In this document: positions 1-12,400 of the stretch, one piece after another | Layout: each line of letters begins with the position of its first letter | How positions within the stretch are numbered: the first letter of the stretch is position 1 | From: Auanema rhodensis | Lineage: Eukaryota; Animalia; Nematoda | DNA length: 64,000 bases | NCBI GenBank assembly: GCA_964057225.1 | Contig: OZ059899.1 | Coordinates: forward strand, 15,004,001 to 15,068,000 | Reading direction: 5' to 3' | The notes under the pieces: generated by a model | The model's input: only the letters and a program-made list of their open reading frames with translations | Databases searched by the model: none | Told to the model about the DNA's origin: nothing | Made by a program: the position numbers and the translations under genes

Positions 1-911
1 TCTCTCTCACTTTCTCTCTCTTTCTTGTCTGTTTTTTTCTGTGTTTGGTGATGATGATGGCTTGTCTTTCAATCTTCTATGAATCATTATGAATCTTCAC
101 TTCATTCATTTCAATCCGATATATCAGCACTACTTTAAAGAGAAAAAAAAAAGATTTTTCTCTCAAAATAAATTAGTTCACTCTGAAAATTTATTTCGTC
201 TTTGCCTCACACGAATACTCTCACATGGCTATTCACATAGCTTTGTTCTCAGAAAATAAAATAAGAAAAAAGTTTCCCAAAAGTTCTTTCTCATCTTCAA
301 CCACCCTCTCAGTTTTTTTTTAATTTGCTTACCATCTTTTTGACAAACAATGTGCAACTACATGAAGAAAAGACTTCTTCGTCCGGTTGCTCGTTGTCAC
401 CATCGTTGTCATCGCTTTCTTCTTCTCGCATTCCTTCAATTCTTCTAATTGACAAAGCTTTAAGGCTTTAACAACTCAATCTTCCAACAACCAGTAAGAT
501 GTGTGTTTGACCTAATGTCATATGGTATTTCCTCTAAATCAGACTCGAAAGACTCGAGAGAAATGGAATATTCCATCTGATGACGTCTGTATATACGAGG
601 CAAGATGACGAATGCAAGAGAAACAACATCGCAGGCCACGTGCCTATCTTCGAATGTCGTCAGTAATTCAATGAACTATCTCATCATCGGCTGCTAGCCT
701 GTTTCCAAGCTTTCACTAAGCTGCATCAGACATGGAACAACAAACTTTTGCAAATAGCCAAATCCGGTGCATAATATCACAATGTATCTTATAGGCTACA
801 AACACTAAAGTATTTCTTTTCAAGACAATATGTTACTTAGGAAAATTTTTGGAAAATGAAGAGCATATAGATCTCAAACGTTTACATAATGATCTCAAAC
901 AAGTTTTATAG

Positions 912-1701
912 GTTTCTATGGGAGCCTTAGCTGAGAAAACTCTCACCTTAATTCGTGCTGATATTTCTCTAACACTCCAGGTAATTGGTCCATCAACCAC
1001 AGATCTAAAAGCTTTATCTTCTTTTAGTCCTTTGGAATATCTGCTGAAGAGGCCGACAAGATCGTTGTGAGTGGAGTTCCAGAAGCTAGTAATGGCTTGA
1101 CAGCTCCCGTGTGTGATCTCGTGAGCTTATTCAGTGAATTACGCGATATGGGTTTGAAGTTGGCACTCTGCACTGCTGACAGCAGGTAAGCATGCATATA
1201 GTTTAGAAGATCACAGTATAGAACTGGAAATAGACAATTATCGAAATAACAAATTGAATTACAGACGTGCAACTGAAGAACAGATGCGCATTCTTGGAAT
1301 TTCAACAATGCTGGATGATGTTGTTTGTGGAAATGATGCTGGAATCGTTCCAAAGCCTTCTCCTCACTGTGCTATGCAGATTTGCAAACGTATTGGTGTT
1401 CAACTTAACGTAAGTTTATCCGATTATGAATGCTAATAAACCAGAATCAAATTGCAGGAAGCTGTCATCGTTGGAGATACCATCGCAGATCTGAAGATGG
1501 GACGTGTTGCAGGGCTTCGAGCTAGCATTGCTGTACTCAGTGGAGTGGGAAATCGTGAAACGCTGTCAGAATTCTCTGACTACTTCGTAAGTTTATATTT
1601 CAAACATCAAGCTTAAGCTGTAATGTATTTAGATTGAGGACGTTGGTGAACTACCATCATTGATCAGTGACAAAATGAATGAAGATACCAAAAGAGGATA
1701 A
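912..1701 (+). CDS. HAD-superfamily hydrolase (phosphoglycolate phosphatase-like), 3' exons only; 5' end not resolved, probably upstream of the window
   Basis: Five GT-AG exons starting at 912, 1028, 1265, 1458 and 1633 translate to ...LKLALCTADSR...VCGNDAGIVPKPSP...IVGDTIADLKMGRVAG...VLSGVG...; these are HAD motifs II (T), III (KP) and IV (GDxxxD). Stop TAA at 1699-1701. Confidence 0.85.
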
Positions 1702-2385
1702 AAAGCTACAACTCACCGTTTCTCAGCATTCTTCATCACCTTGCATTTTAACAAAACCATATATTCACCCCTTTGATATTAAGAACAACATAGAATTTAG
1801 TTTTAATTTATGAAATTTGGCACACGATTCACTTCGTACCACAAATTTTTCAAATTTCTTTTAAAATATCTAATAGAGTTCAAAATATATATATATATAT
1901 ATTTATATTTAATGATTTTATAAAACAGGTAGATCTAATGCAAATTACGAAACATGAAGCAGCTTTTCGAAGTTTTCATATATTTAAAACAAAACATTTT
2001 ATAAAATTTGATATACGAAATAGATCTATCTATCTATATAACGTTTTTAAGTTTTTATTATTAAAAACTTAAACTTTCTTTTGTAGTCTCTGGATTTATA
2101 TGAGAAGTTTGAATCATTTCTTCTCACTCTGTCTCTAATTTCTCTTTAATTATGTGATTTTATGCTTTTAATTGCGACTTGAGCCAACGTATACCTTCTT
2201 TTCCCTTTTTTTTAGTATTGTTCTAATGTTTGCTAAACTTTTCTGATCTCATCAAATTACTTCAGCTATTGCTCGATTTCCCATTGTGTTTGATCTCTTC
2301 AGAATCACATTCTGTATACCATTCCAAACTAATTTTCTGGTCAAGCCTTCTAAATCAAAGCAATATACTTTATATTTTATAAATA

Positions 2386-2390
<5 letters not shown>

Positions 2391-2483
<93 letters not shown>
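2391..2483. repeat. (AT)n microsatellite, ~46 units with one interruption
   Basis: Directly visible; produces the spurious IYIYIY ORFs. Confidence 0.95.
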
Positions 2484-3072
2484 ATACTTTAAATGTTCCC
2501 ACTTTATAAGGAAACTCATTAAATATTTAAATAGAATTAATTTGAATTTCAACAAATGTAACAGCTTTCACGTATAAGAGTTTTTACCTGATATTCAATA
2601 TATTCAAAACATGCTTCATGAGCTGGGTGTTGCTTCGTGTTATTCCTTTGAATTTGGACTTAAAGGATTATAGCTCAAAGATGTACATATATCATTTCTG
2701 ATATACAAATTGATGCAAAAGGCAGTCTGCTCTTTGTGACTGAAAAAAGATGTAAGAACTAGAAATAGCTAGACACTACAAGCAGAAGAAGTTTTATAAA
2801 GAATCATGATCATGAAATACTGTTGAAGCAATGTATTCATAGAACATCTTCATCAAATCTTTGTCAAAGTACTTTAGAAGCATTGTGTTAAAGAATAGAA
2901 AACGCTTTATTAAACAGGTAAAAACACAAAGAAAAATGATTAAAGTGAATGTATATCAATCGAACGATTTTTTCTCTGGTAGCATGCATGCGGTAATAAT
3001 GTTGGATGGTAATATTGAAAAAATTGAGATTCTAGCTGGATGATTCTGAAGAAACGATAAAGATACAAATAT

Positions 3073-5204
3073 TTATAAACTATTTTTACCTTCCACATCA
3101 GGTACCAAGGACATATCCATGATATATTCTTTTGTAGTTCTTGCAAAATTGCTTACATTATTTTTAAACTCCACGGATTGAATGTAAGAAAATTTCTTCA
3201 GAAGTTTGGCTAATGTCATGATTAGCTTAGCTGAACTATTTGCAGCCTTGTGTGCTTTTGGCTTCATACAATATTCATACTTCTCTTGTGCAATAGTATA
3301 TGTTCTAGTTTCTACTACAGATACATAATAAAAGTGTATCTTATCTTGGAGTTTGCGTACAACTAATAAAAATTCCTCGATTTTGCCGTCAAGAATGTCA
3401 AGTTCCTCAATATTCCGTAGCTGTGACAAGCTGTTTATTTTCATTGCACATAACCTCTTCAAACAAACGGTTTGATTAATTGATTGTTCTAATGCAGCAT
3501 ACATATCGCTTTCATTCAATTTATCCATCAGAAATTGAATTTCTTTAAAGTCCCGAATATTCTGCTTAAGTAGTGTTAGATCTGATGTGAATTTGCAAAA
3601 TTCTTTAAAATACAACTGTTCCGCAAGTAAGGTGGCCCTATCAATCAGCTTTTCGTCCACAAAATCTCCATTCTGTTGTCTGTAGCCTTTTCGACATATG
3701 TTGTTCATAACTGTAGTTATTTGACTAAGTTTGCGAGTGTTGCTCAAGAATGGAACAGCAAAATTTGCATAGTCAACAGCGAGGTTAGAAAGTTTGATAG
3801 CGTGATCAGTAGAAATCTTGATGGCGGGATCATTATGTTTCTCTTCGAGTTCTTCGATTGTTTGCTTGGTAAGTACAGTTGCCGATTGAAAAAGAAGATT
3901 CATATTCTTTATGAAACTGCAAGAATCACAAATACGAACAAAATGTTTATGGACCAACGAAGTTTTTTCCATCAAAAGTTGTTCACAGTTTCGCAGCTGC
4001 GAACAGAGATGCTCCAAGACGTCAATAAATCCTTTAAAGCGTTCTAAAGCGTCAGACACGGTTGTATTTTTGTCGATCTTGTTGAACATGTAGAAGCGTA
4101 CTTGCTCTGTCATTAAATTTATTTGAAAACAGACGTCTAGTACGTCAGAGCCAAAGTAGTGAACAGATGCGTTATCATCCGAGACGATATCGTCGAATGC
4201 ATTACTTATGCTGCTAATCATGTCCATACTGTTTTGTAATGGTTGATATGCCGTATACATATACTTCATTATTTTATCCAGCATAGCTTTTATTTTCTCA
4301 ATCGGAAACTCAGAGTTCAAGCAGCAAATAGAATTAGTATTCATGGAACTAACGGCTATACTAAGCAAATGAAGTGCAACTTCTATATTTTTCGTTGCGC
4401 AATCCATATGATTTGGGTCATTGTGCAGACACCTGGTTCCAGAAATATCAGGAACCGATTGCTCCGCCTTCTCCATACAATCCCACTCGCAGTCTTCCAA
4501 GCTGATATCATGAAGAACACTGAAGGTAATCTTCTTTCCTCCTTTAGTATAATCCGTAGTGTACCATGCATTTTCGTCTTCATCATAGCGTAGATGAGGG
4601 TTGTCGCTTTGATCAATCCAATCAAGATATTTATTTTCTTCAGCAAATTTGAATTCTTCTTCTCCTTTTGTTAATAACAATCTTGTGTATTTGTGATGAT
4701 TTACAGATAGCCAAAAGTCATAATCCTTGAATCGATCTAACGGAACAAGTGCTCGATGATATTTCACTCCAGGTTTCCCATTGGATGGGTCAGCAGATGT
4801 AGTAGGTAAACTATCTTCGGATAGCGTTGTTGTGAAATTTCGTCCTTGCGAGTACACCAACGTACCAGAAATTCGAAGAGGCTATAGAAATGAAAATAAA
4901 TAAATAAAGATAAATATATATTATACAGAGCTTTCATATCTCTTCCTCTTCTTCCACTTTCTGAGACTACAGCTTAGGTTATTAAGTTGGATTTCAAGTT
5001 CGAAAAGCTAGACAAAAATCAAAACGTATGGTTTCAATAACCTTTTCAGAGTTTCATATCTTGAGTCGTCGAAAATCATGGAGATGGGATTCAGGAAAAC
5101 CATGTATATATATTTATTTATATATATTATACTATAGAACTTACTTCTGTTTCTGGTATATCAGTTACATGATAAGCGTACAAAGCTTTAGTGCCTGCCG
5201 GCAT
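3073..5204 (-). CDS. Lineage-specific ~649-aa protein: N-terminal PHYHIP-C-like domain plus long helical C-terminal region (gene B)
   Basis: TTTCAG upstream of ATG 5204. Exons 5204-5145 (MPAGTKALYAYHVTDIPETE, GTAAGT donor), 5007-4927 (less certain) and 4881-3073, in frame with the 595-aa ORF. Domain motifs KYHRALVPLDRFKDYDFWL, LLLTKG, NPHLRYD, WYTTDY and CEWD are shared with the neighbouring gene. Family call is from remembered motif resemblance. Confidence 0.75.
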
Positions 5205-6483
5205 TAGATATTCGAATATTTCTGAAATATAGAAAATTGGAATAAAAAATGAATACGTATTTTAAGAAATATATATAGATATGTAGAATAAGTTGTTATA
5301 TTAGTTAACGAATCAAGTTTTAAATCTACTACGATTGAAACTATTTCGTCTTATTGCGTATTGTAGCAAAAGTTTGTAAGAAATGAGTCAAAATTAGGAT
5401 AAATATAGAAATCGAAATGAAAACATATGAAATCAACTTATTCAATTTATATACATGAACATCTAATATAGACAAGTTCAATTGTATTTGATTTTAATGA
5501 AACTTTAGGATCTTGATATCAAACAATGCTCAGCATTTCTTGGTAAATGAGGTATTGAATGCCAGCAGTTTCATAATTGCTTGGCTGTTTGCTTCATTAC
5601 TTCACATGAGCTATCAATATTTTTATCAATTTCGTAATATTTTTGTGAAGACTATTGATATAGTTAGTAATTGCTATGAATATACGGAACTCAGATAAAT
5701 TGTTTGATAAATAAAGAATTTATACTTCTTTTAATAAGCTATTAGAAAATTATATTTGAAATATATAATAAGAATTTTCATTTTTTCATGTGAGTATCAC
5801 GTTTTTTGATATATTGATTTGAAATTTCATGAATAACAACAATGCAGCTCGAAAAGTTTGATTAAAGCCTTATTTAAACAAAAATGATGACAACGTTCTT
5901 ACTATCTTTAACGATGTAACAAAGTTTATTTGGATTTTGCTTTTATATTATATATTCAATTGCAAAACAATATAATAAAGATTTTAAGACATTACATGAA
6001 CAATGAAATCAAATTGCTTTGTATTTAGCAGCGAATTGTGCCAAAGTAACAGCATTGTTTGTGTACTTTTCGACGATCGCTATGATACTCCTTGTGTATC
6101 TTCACCGGAAATGAATTCTGAACAAGTATTCCGGTGTGTTATTACACGATTTGAAAATATCTTAAGAAGAAGGTACCTTCATACCATCAGAGGAAGCATA
6201 GTTGGTAGTTCAATTTTTCTCGTTCGGTATGAATTAGCCACTATTGTCTCCTGAGTTGGAACATTAGGTGCGTATTGTAAGTTCCTTCCCACAGCCATCT
6301 CTGTAAGAACTGGGAAGAATCGCGAAATTTCAAAATACAATGAAACAATAATTAATATTATTTATTTATATTTATAATTATATCTTTATAGTTTATACAA
6401 TTAATACAAAATGCTCTTACAACGATTTCGGGACAATCATTTGGTCTGAATTTCATAATTAAACCCAAAGGTGGAGGATGCAT

Positions 6484-7707
6484 TTACGAAGTTTCTTCAC
6501 ACTGCTTTACAACAGAATCCCATAGGCAATCATCATCTAATTTAACATTGTGAAATACGAAGAAATTGACGTGTATTCCATTAGTCGAAGAATCATTTGA
6601 ATACCAGGTATCTTCATTAGGATTATAGCGGAGATAAGGATTAATTATCCGATTTAGAGGTTGAATAACATCCAGCTTGGAAGCTTTTTCAAACTCAACC
6701 TCTCCTTTAGTAAGTAGCAACGTGATCCTATCGTCATATGTGGAAAGAAGCCAGAAGTCATAATCCTTGAATCGATGTAATGGAACCAGAACTCGATGGT
6801 ATTTTACTTCATCGGTGCTAGTTGTAACCGAATTCGAAGTAGAAGGTAGATCTCTTGCAGCCATTGACGTAGAGAATAAAATACATATATCTTCTTCTAA
6901 TTGAGTACAAAGTTCGGGTAACTCAGCTTTTTCTAATTGCAATTCTTCGTATTTCGGACAATCCTGAACAGTTTTCAACATGTAAGCATATTCAGTATGT
7001 ATTACCTGGGTTGTTGGTATATTCGTTACATGATAAGCATAACAAACGTTGTAATCTGCCAGTTTGCTGTCAATTTTCATGACTGAATCCCATATGCATT
7101 CTTCATCCAATTCAATATTATGAAGAATAGCCAAGTTTATGATTGTTCCATCTTTATAGAAATCATTGGAATACCATGTATCTTCCTTAAGATCATAACG
7201 AAGATAAGGATTTGCTTCCCTATTAAGTTTTTTCAAAGTAAGCTTTGAAGCTTTCTCTGCTTCTATATCTCCTTTCGTCAGAAGTAAATTCTTGATGAAG
7301 CCACCAGAACAAAGCCATAAGTTATAGTCTTGGAATCGATTCAAAGGGATGAGAATTCTATGATATTTAAATCCAATTTGACCAATTAGAGGATATAAAG
7401 AAGTAAGAGGTATTCGTCCTCCGTGTAATGAAATCGAAAAGAAGGTGCAGGATTCTCCATCTAATTGGGAATATCCTTTGAAGGAGTGTACTATTCGTCC
7501 TTCTAATTTGTTATATTTTGGACAAAGCTAAAAGATATTATTTGAGGAAACTGATTGTAAATCCATGCTACATCTGTGTTTTCAATTAAAACTAACAACA
7601 TTTCAAACTTTGAAGAATAAACTTACTTTTTCTGATTGTCCTAATTGATTTGATGCTGGTATATCAGTTACATAATACGCATATAAAACTTTAGTGTCTA
7701 CAGGCAT
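6484..7707 (-). CDS. Lineage-specific ~374-aa protein with two tandem PHYHIP-C-like domains (gene A)
   Basis: Exon 1 7707-7627 (MPVDTKVLYAYYVTDIPASNQLGQSEK, GTAAGT donor); exon 2 7527-6484 after a TTTTAG acceptor, in frame with the 286-aa ORF. Internal duplication: YAY[YH]VT[DN]IP...CPKY...FS...KYHR.L.PL.RF.DY..WL...LLLTKG...NPYLRY...WYSND...C.WDSV occurs twice. Confidence 0.8.
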
Positions 7708-9378
7708 TATAATTTAACTTTGAATAAGAAAATTCATTTGAATTAAATTAAAAAGATTTTAAAGTTATATGTTATGGAATTAAAATAATTTCTATTGACC
7801 AAAGTTATGACGTGAGTAACTGTGCACAAATCGGCAGAAAAGGCGTGGTCACGCCTGTCTCAGAGCAAATCTTCAAATGTTTATTGATGAATTGGTAATA
7901 GAGAATTGAAAAGGAATTACAAGATATATCTTTTCCTGAACAATAATCTTTTCATAATGCTTTAGTAGATTAATGGAAATTAATTTAAATTATTTAACAT
8001 ATTGACAGATTCTCCTACAACAACTATTTATATAATATTTCTATTAAATTATAAAATACAAATATATAATTTAATTATAAATACTGTAGTTTAATATATT
8101 TTTCTAAATGAATAATTAAAAATGATACTGTATTCATTGTTATTTGTGATGCATAGGCATTCGGTTGTTAATTTTTTAAATTTAATTGATTTTGATATGA
8201 TTTCAAATATTTTCAGAATATTCATGAAGCTGCAAATCAAATGTATTTGCCAAGAAAATCTTCTTCAACTTCAATTAAAGAATGATAATTGAATCAAAGT
8301 ATTCGTTAAGTTTGAATTTTTTTTATTTCATAAAAGTATTTCTGTTTCATTAATTATTCAAGCTTCTAACGTTCATTTTTGGAAACTAGAAGTTACTATA
8401 GAAGAGCTTCAACACCTTGCTTTGATCCTATTAACTCTCATAATCACTTGCTATTTCGTAATTTCTTTTTTTATTTCTTTTATTTGTTTGTATATATACT
8501 TTTTCATTTTTAATTTGAAAAATATAAAAAAATTATAAAAATATATTCATATTTGATAAGTTTTGTGTTATTTCTCATATCTAATATATAAAGACAATTC
8601 AATTAATAATGAATATAAAATATATAATGACATCAAAGAAACACAAAACTTATCTATGAAGAAGAAAAAAACAATTTCTATTTAACATTGAATTGAGAGA
8701 AGCTATGTTGTTAATCATATCATTAAGTTGAAAAAAATGCTCAAATATGTTCTAAATCATCTAAGCCGAGGTTTATAAGACTTTCACTTTACTACATTTC
8801 AAAAGAACTTAAGCTTACATTGCAAAGTAAGCAAAGGCAAGTTGTGAGATGTAGCATATGTTGGTATAGCATGAGCATGATGTTGCTAATGATTATGATA
8901 AACTGTCTAAGAATTGTCTTCTTCTAGCTCTCATTAAGCAGAAAATAGTCGTCATTATAGTTATGTATATGAACGACATTTGCTCTTGATCTATAGCATA
9001 TATAAGGTTTGTTGTCTTTTTTTTCTTTTCTTTTTCAAGTTTTAAAGTTTTTTTTACAAGATTTTTCCAAGAAAAAAATCAAAGTTGCAGCTAATTGTAT
9101 TGAAAAACTGTATTTTTTTGTACGTAAATGTAGACAGAACGACGACAGAAATGTAAAATGAAGATATATAAAGAGTCTGGAGACATTGACGAAGAGAGAG
9201 GAAGAGAGAGGAAGAGAGTGACAATGGCAAATAGACAAGAAATAGAGGGACTGTGAAGCAGCAGATTTCTTGGATCTAGCTGTGGTAAAGTAGCTTAGGA
9301 GGGTGATTTGGGGAAGGGGGCAGGGGGGATATAGTAGTAGTTGTAGTGTAGTTGTTGTATAGAGTAGATATAAGGAAA

Positions 9379-9461: not shown

Positions 9462-12400
9462 CTAAAAATAGTTGAAATTAGAAATAAAATTAATATTATT
9501 ATATTGATTTGATTAACTATATGTAATAGTTAAAGGAGGGATAGATAGAGAAGGGTATTTGCTTGTTTTTCAATGAGTTAGTAGTACGAAAAGGAATGAA
9601 TATCTGTACATATATTGAGGTAAAACTTGAAATTATTAAAGTTTTTTATGAAAAAAAAACAAATAGTATATAATAATGATAAAGTATATTATACATTTAT
9701 ATGTTATATATAACTATATATTCATATATAGTTATATATTTAGAAAAAATGACAGAAAAAGTGAAAATAAGGCTGACTGATGATGTAAAAACACAATGTA
9801 AGCAAGTCAATAATCATCCTGAAATTCCTATTTACTAGGAAAAACAGAGAAGATACAGAAGTAGAAGATGAAGGAATTATCGAAGTTACATCAAACCACG
9901 CAATACAATAATCAGAGTGTTTAGTTAGCTGGAAAGTAGTAGGAGAAACTCGGCACACCGGGGGTGGGGGGAGGGAGGAAAGGTTGTATGGATGATGCTT
10001 GAACAGTTCTTCGTATGAAGCATATCCGTAGTAGCATCTAGCAGTAGACTTCATCTTAACAGCTTTATCATTGAAAATAAAACTTTTAAGATGATTGGAT
10101 TACCGTTAGATGAGATATGAGTCATAGATGAAGAATGTTAAAGAAATATAAAGAGTATCATAACATTGCATTGGCTCTTGCTCCAAGAATTTTTTTGTCA
10201 AAATTTTCCAATTTGCTTGGAAAAAAAAAGATAAATAGGGATTCTGAAGCAGGAGAAGTAGGAAAAACCAGATTAGAAACATTAAATTCACATCATAATT
10301 CGATTAAATAAAACAATTCAAATCAATTAGAGCATTTCAGCTGACTGAATAAAGATTGAAGGTGATGATGATGATGAAAATCTGACGATAGCCAATATTC
10401 TGAAGATTTAGACGACGTTCAATTCGCAAATGAGATGATCCAATTCTTCTTGCAGCTTCTTGCTTTCACGAACAGATGTATCTTTCTCATCTGAAACTCA
10501 CATTCAAACACACGGCAAACATAAGTTTCAAGTTTTTAAAATGCTTTTGCAGTGAAATGCATAAAGATTAGTAAGGGTTGATATGATTAAAAGCTTTAAC
10601 TATGCTATTAGATCGTGCAATTAGAAAATTTATAATTTCGTTTAATGAGAGAAACAATGAAAATTCTATGATTTTCATTGTTATATCTCTAAATTAGTAT
10701 TTGGTTGAGTTTATAACACACAAACACACACAGAATGATCATCTGATTGAACATCATTTGAATCAACTTAACTCATGATGCTTCTAACTTGTAACATCTA
10801 AGCTTTACTACAAGTTCAAGTTATCATCTCATTACATCTCTTCAAAACAGTAAAGATGTGTGAATGAGCAAGATTCAGATGGGTTAGAATCAGAAGACAG
10901 GTAAAGAAGAGAGAAGACACACACACATAACTACGAGGACAAAACCGTTATCTTACATTTATGATCCTTGAATCTCCTGGACGGTTTGCTCAATCTCTTC
11001 CGTAAGATTACGGACACGTTCCTTCTCCAACAACAGCTCGTCTGTACAACACATGGACAATAGACATACACAGACATTTTGATATTTTATTTTCGATTTC
11101 TCTCATCAGGAATGATGTCGTGGTCGTGGTCGTCACCGTTATTACTATGGCATACTTCTGATTCTGATGATATTTTGTCCGAAGGTCTACGGTTGACGTC
11201 TTCCTCTTACACAGACAGATCAGAATACTTTCTAATCAGACGATCGAACAATGACAACGACAATGACATTCAGAATTTTGACGACGACAATCACAACTAA
11301 CACATAACATCAAATGATTTTATTATTCGGTTTTTCTACTTGTACGGCATTTTTACAAAATTATGAAAAATCCGATGTTACACCTCTTCTCAGCTTTGAT
11401 CACATTCCAAGTTTTTGTGGTTCATTTAACGTTTCTCTCAATTAAACTTTGGTTCTCTTTTAATGTTCCAAATTCAAATTTTTATCGAAAGTGTTTGAAA
11501 TCCAGATGCTGTTGCTGGCTTTTTCTTTTTCGCATTCCTCCCACACAGTTAGCAGTCGACAATGAGATGCTTTTCCACGAAATAATTCTCTTCTTCTCCT
11601 TCTCTCTCTCTCTCTCACTCTCTTCTCTTTTTCACGTTTCTCGCTATTGTTTTAGAGAGAGAGAAAGAGATAGAGAGAAAGAGAATGAAAAAGTATAAGA
11701 GATTAAGCTGATGTTTAGTCAGAAGCAACAGCAAGCAAAGCGAATGGAAGTCATCGTTGACTTTAAACTGTGAAAAGCTTCGCAGGGGTGTGTGTGTGGT
11801 ACACACAAAACAAGGCCTGAGAGAGGAAAGTGTAGGAGGATTTGCTCTTACCTCTCACTCTCTCCTGTTATCTTTCCCTCTCTCTCCTTTTCTCTCTCAT
11901 TCTATCAAAATAATGCACAATCTCGAGATAGGTGAGCAATGCTTAGCTGAGATCAGTGAAAAATCGTATCAGAGAAGAAAAACCGAATAATATATGACAG
12001 CAGCTGGTATAATATAAAGCAGCAGCTGCTTTTAAAATTTCTTTAATCGTAATCTTTAACGCATTTTAAGAAAATGTTTGGGTGATGAGCATAAGCTGTG
12101 ATAAGCATTGTTTGTATATAGTTGAATGACGTACCTTCGAGTCTGTCGACTTCCTTTTGGAGCTTCTGGACGGAACGCTCAGCGAATTCAGCACGAGTCT
12201 CAGCCTGGAACAAACATACTGTTAGTCTGATGGCATGTTGGATCAAGAGATTGGAGGTGAATGTGTACAATCGAATGACAACATGTCACAGAAACAAAAT
12301 GCTGAAAGTCAGATGACGTAATGCTCATCTGACTACGAAAGACAACAACGGACGAATTTAGACGACGATGCAAGATTTCTCTTTTCGACACAAGCACAAC

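What the first reader, a model, noticed from the sequence alone, without database searches (positions are those of the whole stretch)
3073..7707. Tandem pair of lineage-specific genes carrying three copies of a PHYHIP-C-like, ADP-ribosyltransferase-like domain
Seen: once the missing first exons are spliced on, each ~180-aa copy reads YAY[HY]VT[DN]IP ... (F/L)FS or NFT ... P.TS..P ... KYHR.L.PL.RF.DY..WL ... LLLTKG ... NP.LRY ... WY..D ... C.WD. Gene A has two copies; gene B has one fused to a long helical tail. Both have unusually long exons (1.0 and 1.8 kb) in a region of tiny exons and sit between conserved genes. From memory, the FFS...P..S.Y..R...N..L layout matches the PHYHIP C-terminal domain, and an N-terminal Y-H-x-T strand followed by an aromatic-S strand is the ART/PARP-type NAD-binding signature. 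Inference: a fast-evolving ART-fold family, possibly immune effectors or a toxin/decoy (toxin-antidote-like) pair.
Basis: partly seen in the sequence, partly recalled or inferred. Interest (0 to 1): 0.8.

Follow-up and report, generated by a model that had tools for sequence, protein, structure and literature searches.

The report
PHYHIP-related, ART-like domain genes in a nematode
Two neighbouring, transcribed worm genes carry three copies of an uncharacterised domain that is a distant relative of the PHYHIP C-terminal domain. Its predicted shape most resembles NAD-using ADP-ribosyltransferases, but the usual catalytic glutamate is missing, so it is more likely an atypical enzyme or a binding module than a toxin.

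Summary
**Observation:** confirmed. Two adjacent minus-strand genes carry three copies of a ~165-aa domain that are 41-45% identical to each other. Spliced RNA contigs confirm both tiny first exons.

**Corrections to the gene models:**
- Gene A's "1.0-kb exon" is split by an in-frame 42-nt intron at the same domain position as the other introns.
- Gene B has a further 44-nt 3' intron, which gives it a different stop codon.

**Family size and range:**
- The genome holds two more intact paralogues and one decayed fragment, all on the same chromosome.
- The domain is not lineage-specific. A profile search found 84 relatives. All four that carry a name are from the nematode genera Panagrolaimus and Mesorhabditis.

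- PHYHIP_C: Pfam's model misses the window genes. Profile-profile comparison with three Pfam-certified PHYHIP_C proteins gives 97-98.5% probability, against 1.8% or less for reversed or shuffled controls.
- Motifs: H-x-T and S-T-[ST] fit ART strands 1 and 2. The expected glutamate position holds Asn or Thr, and two of the five copies have Tyr in place of His.

**Toxin-antidote or immune role:** no evidence either way.

**Verdict:** a real, uncharacterised, PHYHIP_C-related and probably ART-like family, most likely non-canonical or inactive in these copies.

The parts
7627..7707 (-). Gene A exon 1, coding part (27 aa, MPVDTKVLYAYYVTDIP...). It holds strand 1 of domain copy 1, with Tyr in place of the family's His. 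The 5' UTR runs beyond 7800.
   Evidence: Translation. RNA contigs join 7627 to 7527, and one contig continues to 7800 or beyond.
7528..7626 (-). Gene A intron 1 (99 nt, GT..AG, phase 0)
   Evidence: Joint seen in runs X1, X3 and X4.
7006..7527 (-). Gene A exon 2 (522 nt, 174 aa). It holds the rest of domain copy 1 and the first strand (CYAYHVTNIPTTQ) of copy 2.
   Evidence: Translation, alignment A1, contigs.
6964..7005 (-). Gene A intron 2 (42 nt, in frame, no stop codon). It sits at the same domain position as the intron after YAY[HY]VT in copy 1, gene B, L004 and L005.
   Evidence: Joint 6962/7005 with GT..AG ends in X1, X2 and X3, plus a loose end in X4. It reads VIHTEYAYMLKTVQ if not spliced.
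6484..6963 (-). Gene A exon 3, coding part (159 aa plus stop at 6486-6484), the body of domain copy 2. The 3' UTR runs to about 6413.
   Evidence: Translation. Contigs end at 6413-6416.
5145..5204 (-). Gene B exon 1, coding part (20 aa, MPAGTKALYAYHVTDIPETE). The 5' UTR runs to about 5227.
   Evidence: Translation. Contigs join 5145 to 4881.
4882..5144 (-). Gene B intron 1 (263 nt, phase 0)
   Evidence: Contig records 2, 9 and 22 skip it.
4435..4881 (-). Gene B exon 2, first part: the body of the single domain copy.
   Evidence: Translation, alignments A1 and A2.
3090..4434 (-). Gene B exon 2, second part: a ~448-aa tail with no family match. By language-model features it resembles long helical-bundle proteins.
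   Evidence: Pfam gives only a sub-threshold RasGEF match at E 0.038. The Atlas feature search lists DHC_N1 and WASH-4 look-alikes at low recognition. There is no similarity to the tail of L005.
3046..3089 (-). Gene B intron 2 (44 nt).
   Evidence: Joint 3045/3090 in all four runs.
3032..3045 (-). Gene B exon 3, coding part (completes a Glu codon, then SSS and the stop at 3034-3032). The 3' UTR continues below 3000.

Best explanation
Genes A and B are real, spliced, expressed members of a small gene family that arises and decays locally. The family comprises 4 intact genes with 5 domain copies, plus 1 decayed fragment, all within 3.6 Mb of one chromosome.

Their shared ~165-aa domain belongs to a wider, unannotated eukaryotic family. 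The hallmarks of that family are N-terminal AYHVT[ND], then FF[ST]TT, LP..S.YP, Y.R..VPL..F, QV.LLL, N.YL, W..N.Y, FVN and C.WD.V. The family is a remote homologue of the PHYHIP C-terminal domain.

The domain most probably adopts an ADP-ribosyltransferase-like split-sheet fold. In that fold the H-x-T strand and the S-T-[ST] strand would line a nucleotide (NAD+-like) pocket. This placement is inferred, not shown.

The position expected for the catalytic Glu holds a conserved Asn (Asn or Thr here). These worm copies have also lost further family-conserved polar residues: His to Tyr in 2 of 5 copies, the conserved Gln in the 3 window copies, and the YDG motif. I therefore take them to work as non-canonical or catalytically dead ART-like modules, that is, ligand- or partner-binding units. 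Gene A would be a tandem pseudo-dimer whose first unit lacks the His. Gene B and L005 attach the module to long helical scaffolds.

The proteins have no evident signal peptide, so an intracellular role is more likely than a secreted one.
For: - Gene reality and structure: spliced contigs in 4 runs, with the intergenic region uncovered.
- Family in the genome. All paralogues share the phase-0 intron right after the YAY[HY]VT strand. The two copies in gene A are sister to each other at 99/95 support.
- Wider family: 84 hits at E<=1e-3, 45 of them at E<=1e-10. Named members come from Panagrolaimus and Mesorhabditis.
- PHYHIP_C link: P0083, P0085 and P0086 are PF19281 members. hhalign gives Prob 97-98.5 with clean controls.
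- Motifs: the order and spacing fit the ART definition of beta1 R/H-G-T/S, beta2 S-x-S and beta5 x-x-E (PMC7955679).
- Conservation: H 41/41 (partly by selection), T 40/43, S-T-T 43-47/52, R 50/52, Q 44/52, N 42/52, D 45/50.
Against: - No ART family or solved ART matches by sequence.
- I could not see residue-level superpositions, so equating the FVN strand with ART strand 5 rests on order and spacing only.
- The folded query included 14 intron-coded residues (model residues 14-27, low pLDDT).
- Pfam's PHYHIP_C model does not score the window genes.
- The three PHYHIP_C proteins used for comparison were found through this family's own profile.
- Nothing here bears on NAD binding or on biological role.
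Confidence: 0.6

Rival explanations
1. The domain is a PHYHIP_C-type protein-interaction module with its own alpha/beta fold, and the ART resemblance is only a common strand arrangement. It would act purely as an adaptor, as reported for vertebrate PHYHIP. The helical tails add further binding surface.
Against: Thirty-three consecutive top rows out of 48,161 chains belong to one superfamily, in two independent models. A near-invariant set of polar residues (H, T, S/T-T, R, Q, N, D) across the wider family looks more like a ligand or active site than a protein-binding surface.
Confidence: 0.27
2. The domain is an active NAD+-using enzyme with an unusual H / S-T / N site. It would be a mono-ADP-ribosyltransferase or a Tpt1/DarT-like nucleic-acid modifier. 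The window genes would be effectors in defence or genetic conflict, possibly a toxin and decoy/antidote pair.
For: The nearest folds are DarT and Tpt1, both nucleic-acid-directed. Active human ARTs without the Glu exist, namely the H-Y-I/L/Y PARPs and the H-H-V enzyme TRPT1 (table in PMC7955679). The genes are adjacent and arise and decay locally, with one pseudogene. Gene A pairs a His-less copy with a His-bearing copy.
Against: There is no functional evidence. These worm copies have lost several residues that the wider family conserves. Both genes appear in all four runs with no sign of polymorphism. There is no signal peptide. Adjacent paralogues are common without any toxin-antidote relation.
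Confidence: 0.1
3. The genes are non-functional: recently decayed copies or annotation artefacts of open frames in AT-rich DNA.
For: One family fragment is clearly decayed (L014, 6 stops). There are no close homologues by word search.
Against: The open frames are intact at 360 and 621 codons. Precise GT..AG splicing is seen in four runs. The conserved motifs are shared with 84 distant relatives. The AlphaFold model is confident.
Confidence: 0.03

Closest known systems
PHYHIP_C (Pfam PF19281), the C-terminal domain of the phytanoyl-CoA hydroxylase-interacting proteins PHYHIP and PHYHIPL
   Same: Collinear profile-profile match over the whole domain, including an aromatic-H-x-T first strand, FF-x-x-N/T, LP..SPY, R..IP..KF, N.FL and WD.V. 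In the tree the worm copies group with the PHYHIP_C trio at 95/87 support, although long branches may contribute to that.
   Different: Pfam's model does not score the window genes, even at E<=10 in a whole-genome scan. That scan finds a separate canonical PHYHIP_C exon on another chromosome instead (L006). The architecture also differs: the domain starts at the N-terminus, is tandemly duplicated in gene A, and is fused to a long helical tail in gene B. No other Pfam domain is present.
ADP-ribosyltransferase superfamily, nearest DarT (ssDNA ADP-ribosylating toxin) and Tpt1/KptA (RNA 2'-phosphotransferase)
   Different: Scores are weak and there is no sequence-profile link. The expected Glu/Asp/Gln position holds Asn or Thr. 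The triad is a hybrid, with His as in the H-Y-E and H-H-h clades and S-T-T as in the R-S-E clade. The domain has extra strands. Two of the five worm copies have Tyr in place of His.
Pseudo-ART domains (PARP13/ZAP, TASOR pseudo-PARP, LRRC9 ART-like)
   Same: An ART-like fold with an incomplete catalytic triad. LRRC9 is a precedent for a eukaryotic ART-like family recognised only by remote methods (PMC7955679).
   Different: There is no detectable sequence relation. The wider family here keeps a strongly conserved polar constellation, unlike LRRC9, whose site is poorly conserved.
Nematode toxin-antidote pairs (for example peel-1/zeel-1, named from my own knowledge)
   Same: Two adjacent, fast-diverging genes without close relatives.
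   Different: Here the two genes are paralogues of each other. No polymorphism, toxicity or drive has been shown.

Membership tests
Pfam PHYHIP_C (PF19281) | Scores above the Pfam gathering threshold (27 bits) | tested here: not met
   No PF19281 hit at E<=1 for either long exon. The whole-genome scan at E<=10 finds only C3:8400218-8400391 (L006), not the window genes.
Pfam PHYHIP_C (PF19281) | Homology to certified members over the whole domain (profile-profile) | tested here: met
   hhalign against P0083, P0085 and P0086 (PF19281 at 64.5 bits) gives Prob 97.0, E 1.1e-10, 131 columns for the own copies and Prob 98.5, E 2.9e-15, 162 columns for the broad family. Reversed and shuffled controls give Prob 1.8 or less. 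Caveat: the trio was found through this family's own profile (E 8.6e-4 library-wide).
Pfam PHYHIP_C (PF19281) | Canonical PHYHIP architecture, an N-terminal fibronectin-III-like region followed by PHYHIP_C (architecture recalled from my own knowledge) | tested here: not met
   The domain begins at residue ~8 of each protein, and no other Pfam domain is detected.
ADP-ribosyltransferase (ART) superfamily | Split beta-sheet ART fold | tested here: inconclusive
ADP-ribosyltransferase (ART) superfamily | Strand-1 motif R/H-G-T/S | tested here: met
   Y-H-V-T in gene A copy 2, gene B and L005. Y-Y-V-T, with the His lost, in gene A copy 1 and L004. H-x-T is near-invariant in the wider family. Motif definition from PMC7955679.
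ADP-ribosyltransferase (ART) superfamily | Strand-2 motif S-x-S or Y-x-x | tested here: inconclusive
   F-S-T-S, F-S-I-S and F-T-T-T lie about 50 residues after the His, on a predicted strand. Structural equivalence to ART strand 2 was not verified residue by residue.
ADP-ribosyltransferase (ART) superfamily | Catalytic Glu (or Asp/Gln) at the front of strand 5 | tested here: not met
   The candidate strand reads (F/W)-V-N in 42/52 family rows. The five own copies read N, N, T, N, T. The assignment of this strand rests on order and spacing.
ADP-ribosyltransferase (ART) superfamily | Sequence-profile match to a known ART family or a solved ART | tested here: not met
   No ART Pfam family among 88 members at E<=0.01. 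PDB profile searches give only noise.
ADP-ribosyltransferase (ART) superfamily | NAD+ binding and ADP-ribosyl transfer | not testable with these tools
   Needs biochemistry.
Toxin-antidote selfish element | Tightly linked toxin and antidote genes with presence/absence polymorphism and drive | not tested
   Only adjacency is shown. No second strain or sister genome was available. The RNA contigs show no differences from the window.

The most novel reading that the evidence does not exclude
The 'AYHVTN' family, and by homology the PHYHIP_C domain of animals including vertebrate PHYHIP and PHYHIPL, would be a previously unrecognised clade of the ADP-ribosyltransferase superfamily with a hybrid H / S-T / N site. 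Some members would be active NAD+-using enzymes, possibly acting on nucleic acids as the nearest folds DarT and Tpt1 do. The worm cluster would be a rapidly turning-over offshoot used in conflict or defence.
Probability: 0.15. Interest if true: 0.8.

Novelty: new variant of a known kind. Interest (0 to 1): 0.55.

Why it matters
PHYHIP and PHYHIPL are conserved animal proteins with no known biochemical activity. In the paper library searched I found no work linking PHYHIP_C to the ART fold. The Pfam ART-clan list quoted in PMC7955679 does not include it either.

If the fold assignment holds, a whole unannotated eukaryotic family of at least 84 sequence clusters, together with PHYHIP_C, gains a testable hypothesis: an NAD-type ligand pocket, in either an enzyme or a pseudoenzyme.

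For this genome, the finding also corrects two gene models. It gives a clean example of an internal domain duplication that carried its intron along with it.

Tried and rejected
Searches that gave nothing:
- Pfam on both long exons: only noise (RasGEF 0.038, Thymosin 0.1).
- Word-index protein search with gene A exon 2+3: no hit.
- PDB sequence-profile searches with A2 and A4: only GFP and ICT1 noise.
- Foldseek against the PDB with both models: nothing at E<=0.001.
- ESM Atlas shape search: best TM 0.43, to an unnamed bacterial cluster.
- Atlas feature search on the domain: no usable hit. On gene B's tail it gave only generic helical-bundle look-alikes at low recognition.
- BLASTP of gene B's tail against L005's tail: no similarity.
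- Search with P0083 for more PHYHIP_C members: only 3 proteins, so the PHYHIP_C side of the profile comparison is shallow.
- Cluster look-ups for 30 relatives: only 4 named, all nematodes, so the family's taxonomic range stays open.
- Aravind's ART review could not be fetched.
- Earlier-findings word search: nothing.

Steps not run:
- Complex prediction of A with B, because I do not claim they bind.
- dN/dS, because the paralogues are about 45% identical (synonymous sites would be saturated) and no sister genome was available.

Readings rejected:
- The pseudogene or artefact reading.
- 'Single long 1.0-kb exon' for gene A.
Full report
**What is in the sequence**

The stretch 3032-7707 holds two genes on the minus strand.
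- Gene A begins at ATG 7707. Its first coding exon reads MPVDTKVLYAYYVTDIP... (27 aa).
- Gene B begins at ATG 5204. Its first coding exon reads MPAGTKALYAYHVTDIPETE (20 aa).
- The long open frames behind them hold three copies of one domain, two in A and one in B. The copies align at 41-45% identity with 42 invariant columns.

**Transcription and gene models**

Four runs from one study hold 54-66% of the sampled words of 3000-7800. Laid on the window, their contigs cover the exons and leave 5254-6380 empty. They skip GT..AG introns, so they behave as RNA. They confirm both first-exon junctions, 7627|7527 and 5145|4881, and they add two introns.

- Gene A has an in-frame, stop-free 42-nt intron at 7005-6964. 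It lies directly after the strand YAYHVTNIPTTQ of copy 2. That is the same domain position as the phase-0 intron of copy 1, of gene B and of the two distant paralogues. The internal duplication therefore carried its intron along.
- Gene B has a 44-nt intron at 3089-3046 that removes the stop at 3073. The protein ends ...PDVE-ESSS, with the stop at 3034-3032.

The resulting models are:
- Gene A: 3 exons, 360 aa.
- Gene B: 3 exons, 621 aa.

**The family in this genome**

A six-frame search of the 181-Mb assembly finds two further intact paralogues on the same chromosome:
- L004 lies 174 kb away and has a short tail.
- L005 lies 1.8 Mb away and has a long tail like gene B's.

With the broader profile, a stop-ridden fragment also appears 1.8 Mb to the other side (L014). 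All intact genes share the layout of a tiny first exon followed by a large exon. The tails of gene B and L005 show no similarity to each other. In a maximum-likelihood tree the two copies of gene A are sisters at 99/95 support.

**Relatives elsewhere**

- The word-index search found nothing, so no close relative is on record.
- HMMER with the five-copy profile against 1.84 billion representatives found 84 proteins at E<=1e-3 and 45 at E<=1e-10. One of these, P0074, is a repetitive bacterial protein that I take to be spurious.
- The hits share a strikingly conserved AYHVT[ND] strand at or near the N-terminus. They also share YDG.L.G, FF[ST]TT, LP..S.YP, Y.R..VPL..F, QV.LLL, N.YL, W..N.Y, FVN and C.WD.V.
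- The only named members are from Panagrolaimus superbus, Mesorhabditis belari and M. spiculigera. The rest come from unnamed assemblies.

The domain is therefore not lineage-specific, although these particular genes have no close kin.

**PHYHIP_C**

Pfam's model does not score the window genes. One of the 84 hits, P0083, is a bona fide PF19281 member at 64.5 bits against a 27-bit cut-off. Its two relatives are members as well.

hhalign results:
- Five own copies against this trio: Prob 97.0, E 1.1e-10, 131 columns.
- Broad family against the trio: Prob 98.5, E 2.9e-15, 162 columns. This alignment includes the N-terminal aromatic-H-x-T strand, which the searching profile barely modelled.

Reversed or column-shuffled trio alignments give Prob 1.8 or less. 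I accept remote homology to PHYHIP_C. The family lies outside Pfam's present boundary. The genome also carries a separate canonical PHYHIP_C exon on another chromosome (L006).

**Fold**

- With only the five paralogues as alignment, AlphaFold gave pLDDT 65.
- With 52 family sequences it gave pLDDT 89.1 and pTM 0.85.

The query was the unspliced reading of copy 2, so residues 14-27 are intron-coded. They fall in the only low-confidence stretch.

Foldseek found nothing for either model. The exhaustive VIA-align comparison with 48,161 PDB representatives ranked ART-superfamily chains in nearly every top row for both models.
- First model: PARP1 4.8, DarT 4.5, CopC 4.4, TASOR pseudo-PARP 4.2.
- Confident model: DarT 4.3/4.0/3.9/3.8, Tpt1 3.7, PltA 3.6, CC0527 3.4, CopC/OspC3 3.4. 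These are followed by CARDS, HopF, scabin, Arr, ParT, RES, tankyrase, diphtheria toxin, MbcT, PARP1, pertussis S1, TccC3 and LT. That makes 33 ART rows before the first unrelated one.

**Active site**

ARTs are defined by R/H-G-T/S on strand 1, S-x-S or Y-x-x on strand 2, and x-x-E on strand 5 (PMC7955679). In this domain:
- Y-H-V-T opens the domain.
- F-[ST]-T-[ST] follows about 50 residues later.
- The strand in the expected place for strand 5 reads F-V-N.

In the wider family, conservation is H 41/41 (partly by my selection of rows), T 40/43, R84 50/52, Q106 44/52, N160 42/52 and D176 45/50.

The worm copies are degenerate by comparison:
- His is Tyr in gene A copy 1 and in L004.
- Q106 is R, K and Y in the three window copies.
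- N160 is Thr in gene B and L005.
- The YDG motif is gone.

No sequence method links the family to any ART. I could not inspect residue-level superpositions, so the strand equivalences are inferred.

**Interpretation**

Shown:
- The genes are real and expressed.
- The domain is repeated.
- The intron position is conserved.
- The family arises and decays locally.
- There is remote homology to PHYHIP_C.

Probable: an ART-like fold.

Inferred:
- A nucleotide-type pocket formed by the H-x-T and S-T-T strands.
- Loss or change of canonical catalysis.
- Scaffold roles for the helical tails (one search gives only generic helical look-alikes).
- An intracellular location, since the N-termini show no signal peptide.

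The toxin-antidote or immune-effector idea remains untested speculation.

**Limits**

- The PHYHIP_C comparison rests on three related sequences.
- The taxonomic range of the family is largely unknown.

**Context**

The pair lies between a HAD-hydrolase-like gene at about 900-1620 on the plus strand (read from motifs only) and the tropomyosin gene from about 12000 on the minus strand (and earlier finding s1-420405).

Noticed in passing
window 6964-7005: A 42-nt intron that is in frame and free of stop codons, so it is invisible to ORF reading. Other 'long exons' in this genome may hide similar mini-introns.
   Followed up: yes
L014 (G000:C7:13191554-13191847), about L014:1650-1790: A decayed family fragment with 6 stop codons. 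It still reads ...NDY....FVNIATLHDI, closer to the wider family consensus than the intact copies are. A tRNA-like sequence lies about 130 bp downstream (L014:1920-2000).
   Followed up: partly
L004:377-565 (-) and L004:1110-1298 (+): Two identical 62-aa ORFs in opposite orientation form an inverted repeat of at least 189 bp. It ends 8 bp before the first exon of the L004 paralogue and may be a transposon remnant.
   Followed up: no
L006 (G000:C3:8400218-8400391): An exon of a canonical PHYHIP_C gene (31.7 bits, above the Pfam cut-off) on another chromosome. The worm therefore has both the canonical and the divergent type.
   Followed up: partly
P0040 (323 aa), P0001 (397 aa), P0021 (569 aa), P0045 (490 aa): Other architectures exist in the wider family. 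P0040 is a Thioredoxin_8 fusion. P0001 and two Mesorhabditis proteins have two-domain forms, so tandem duplication of this domain has probably happened more than once.
   Followed up: partly
L007 (ENA contig of 614,790 bp): Family members P0004 and P0026 lie on the same contig of an unnamed eukaryote. Around P0004, the called-gene pattern at 408-2453 recurs at 10160-12176, which points to a direct repeat of about 10 kb.
   Followed up: no
window 2370-2500: A long (TA/TATA)n microsatellite, read as YIYIYI... in ORFs, lies just downstream of gene B.
   Followed up: no
window ~900-1620 (+): The neighbouring gene has HAD-hydrolase-like motifs (...VIVGDTIADLKMGRVAGL...). This was read from the ORF list only and was not scanned against Pfam.
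   Followed up: no
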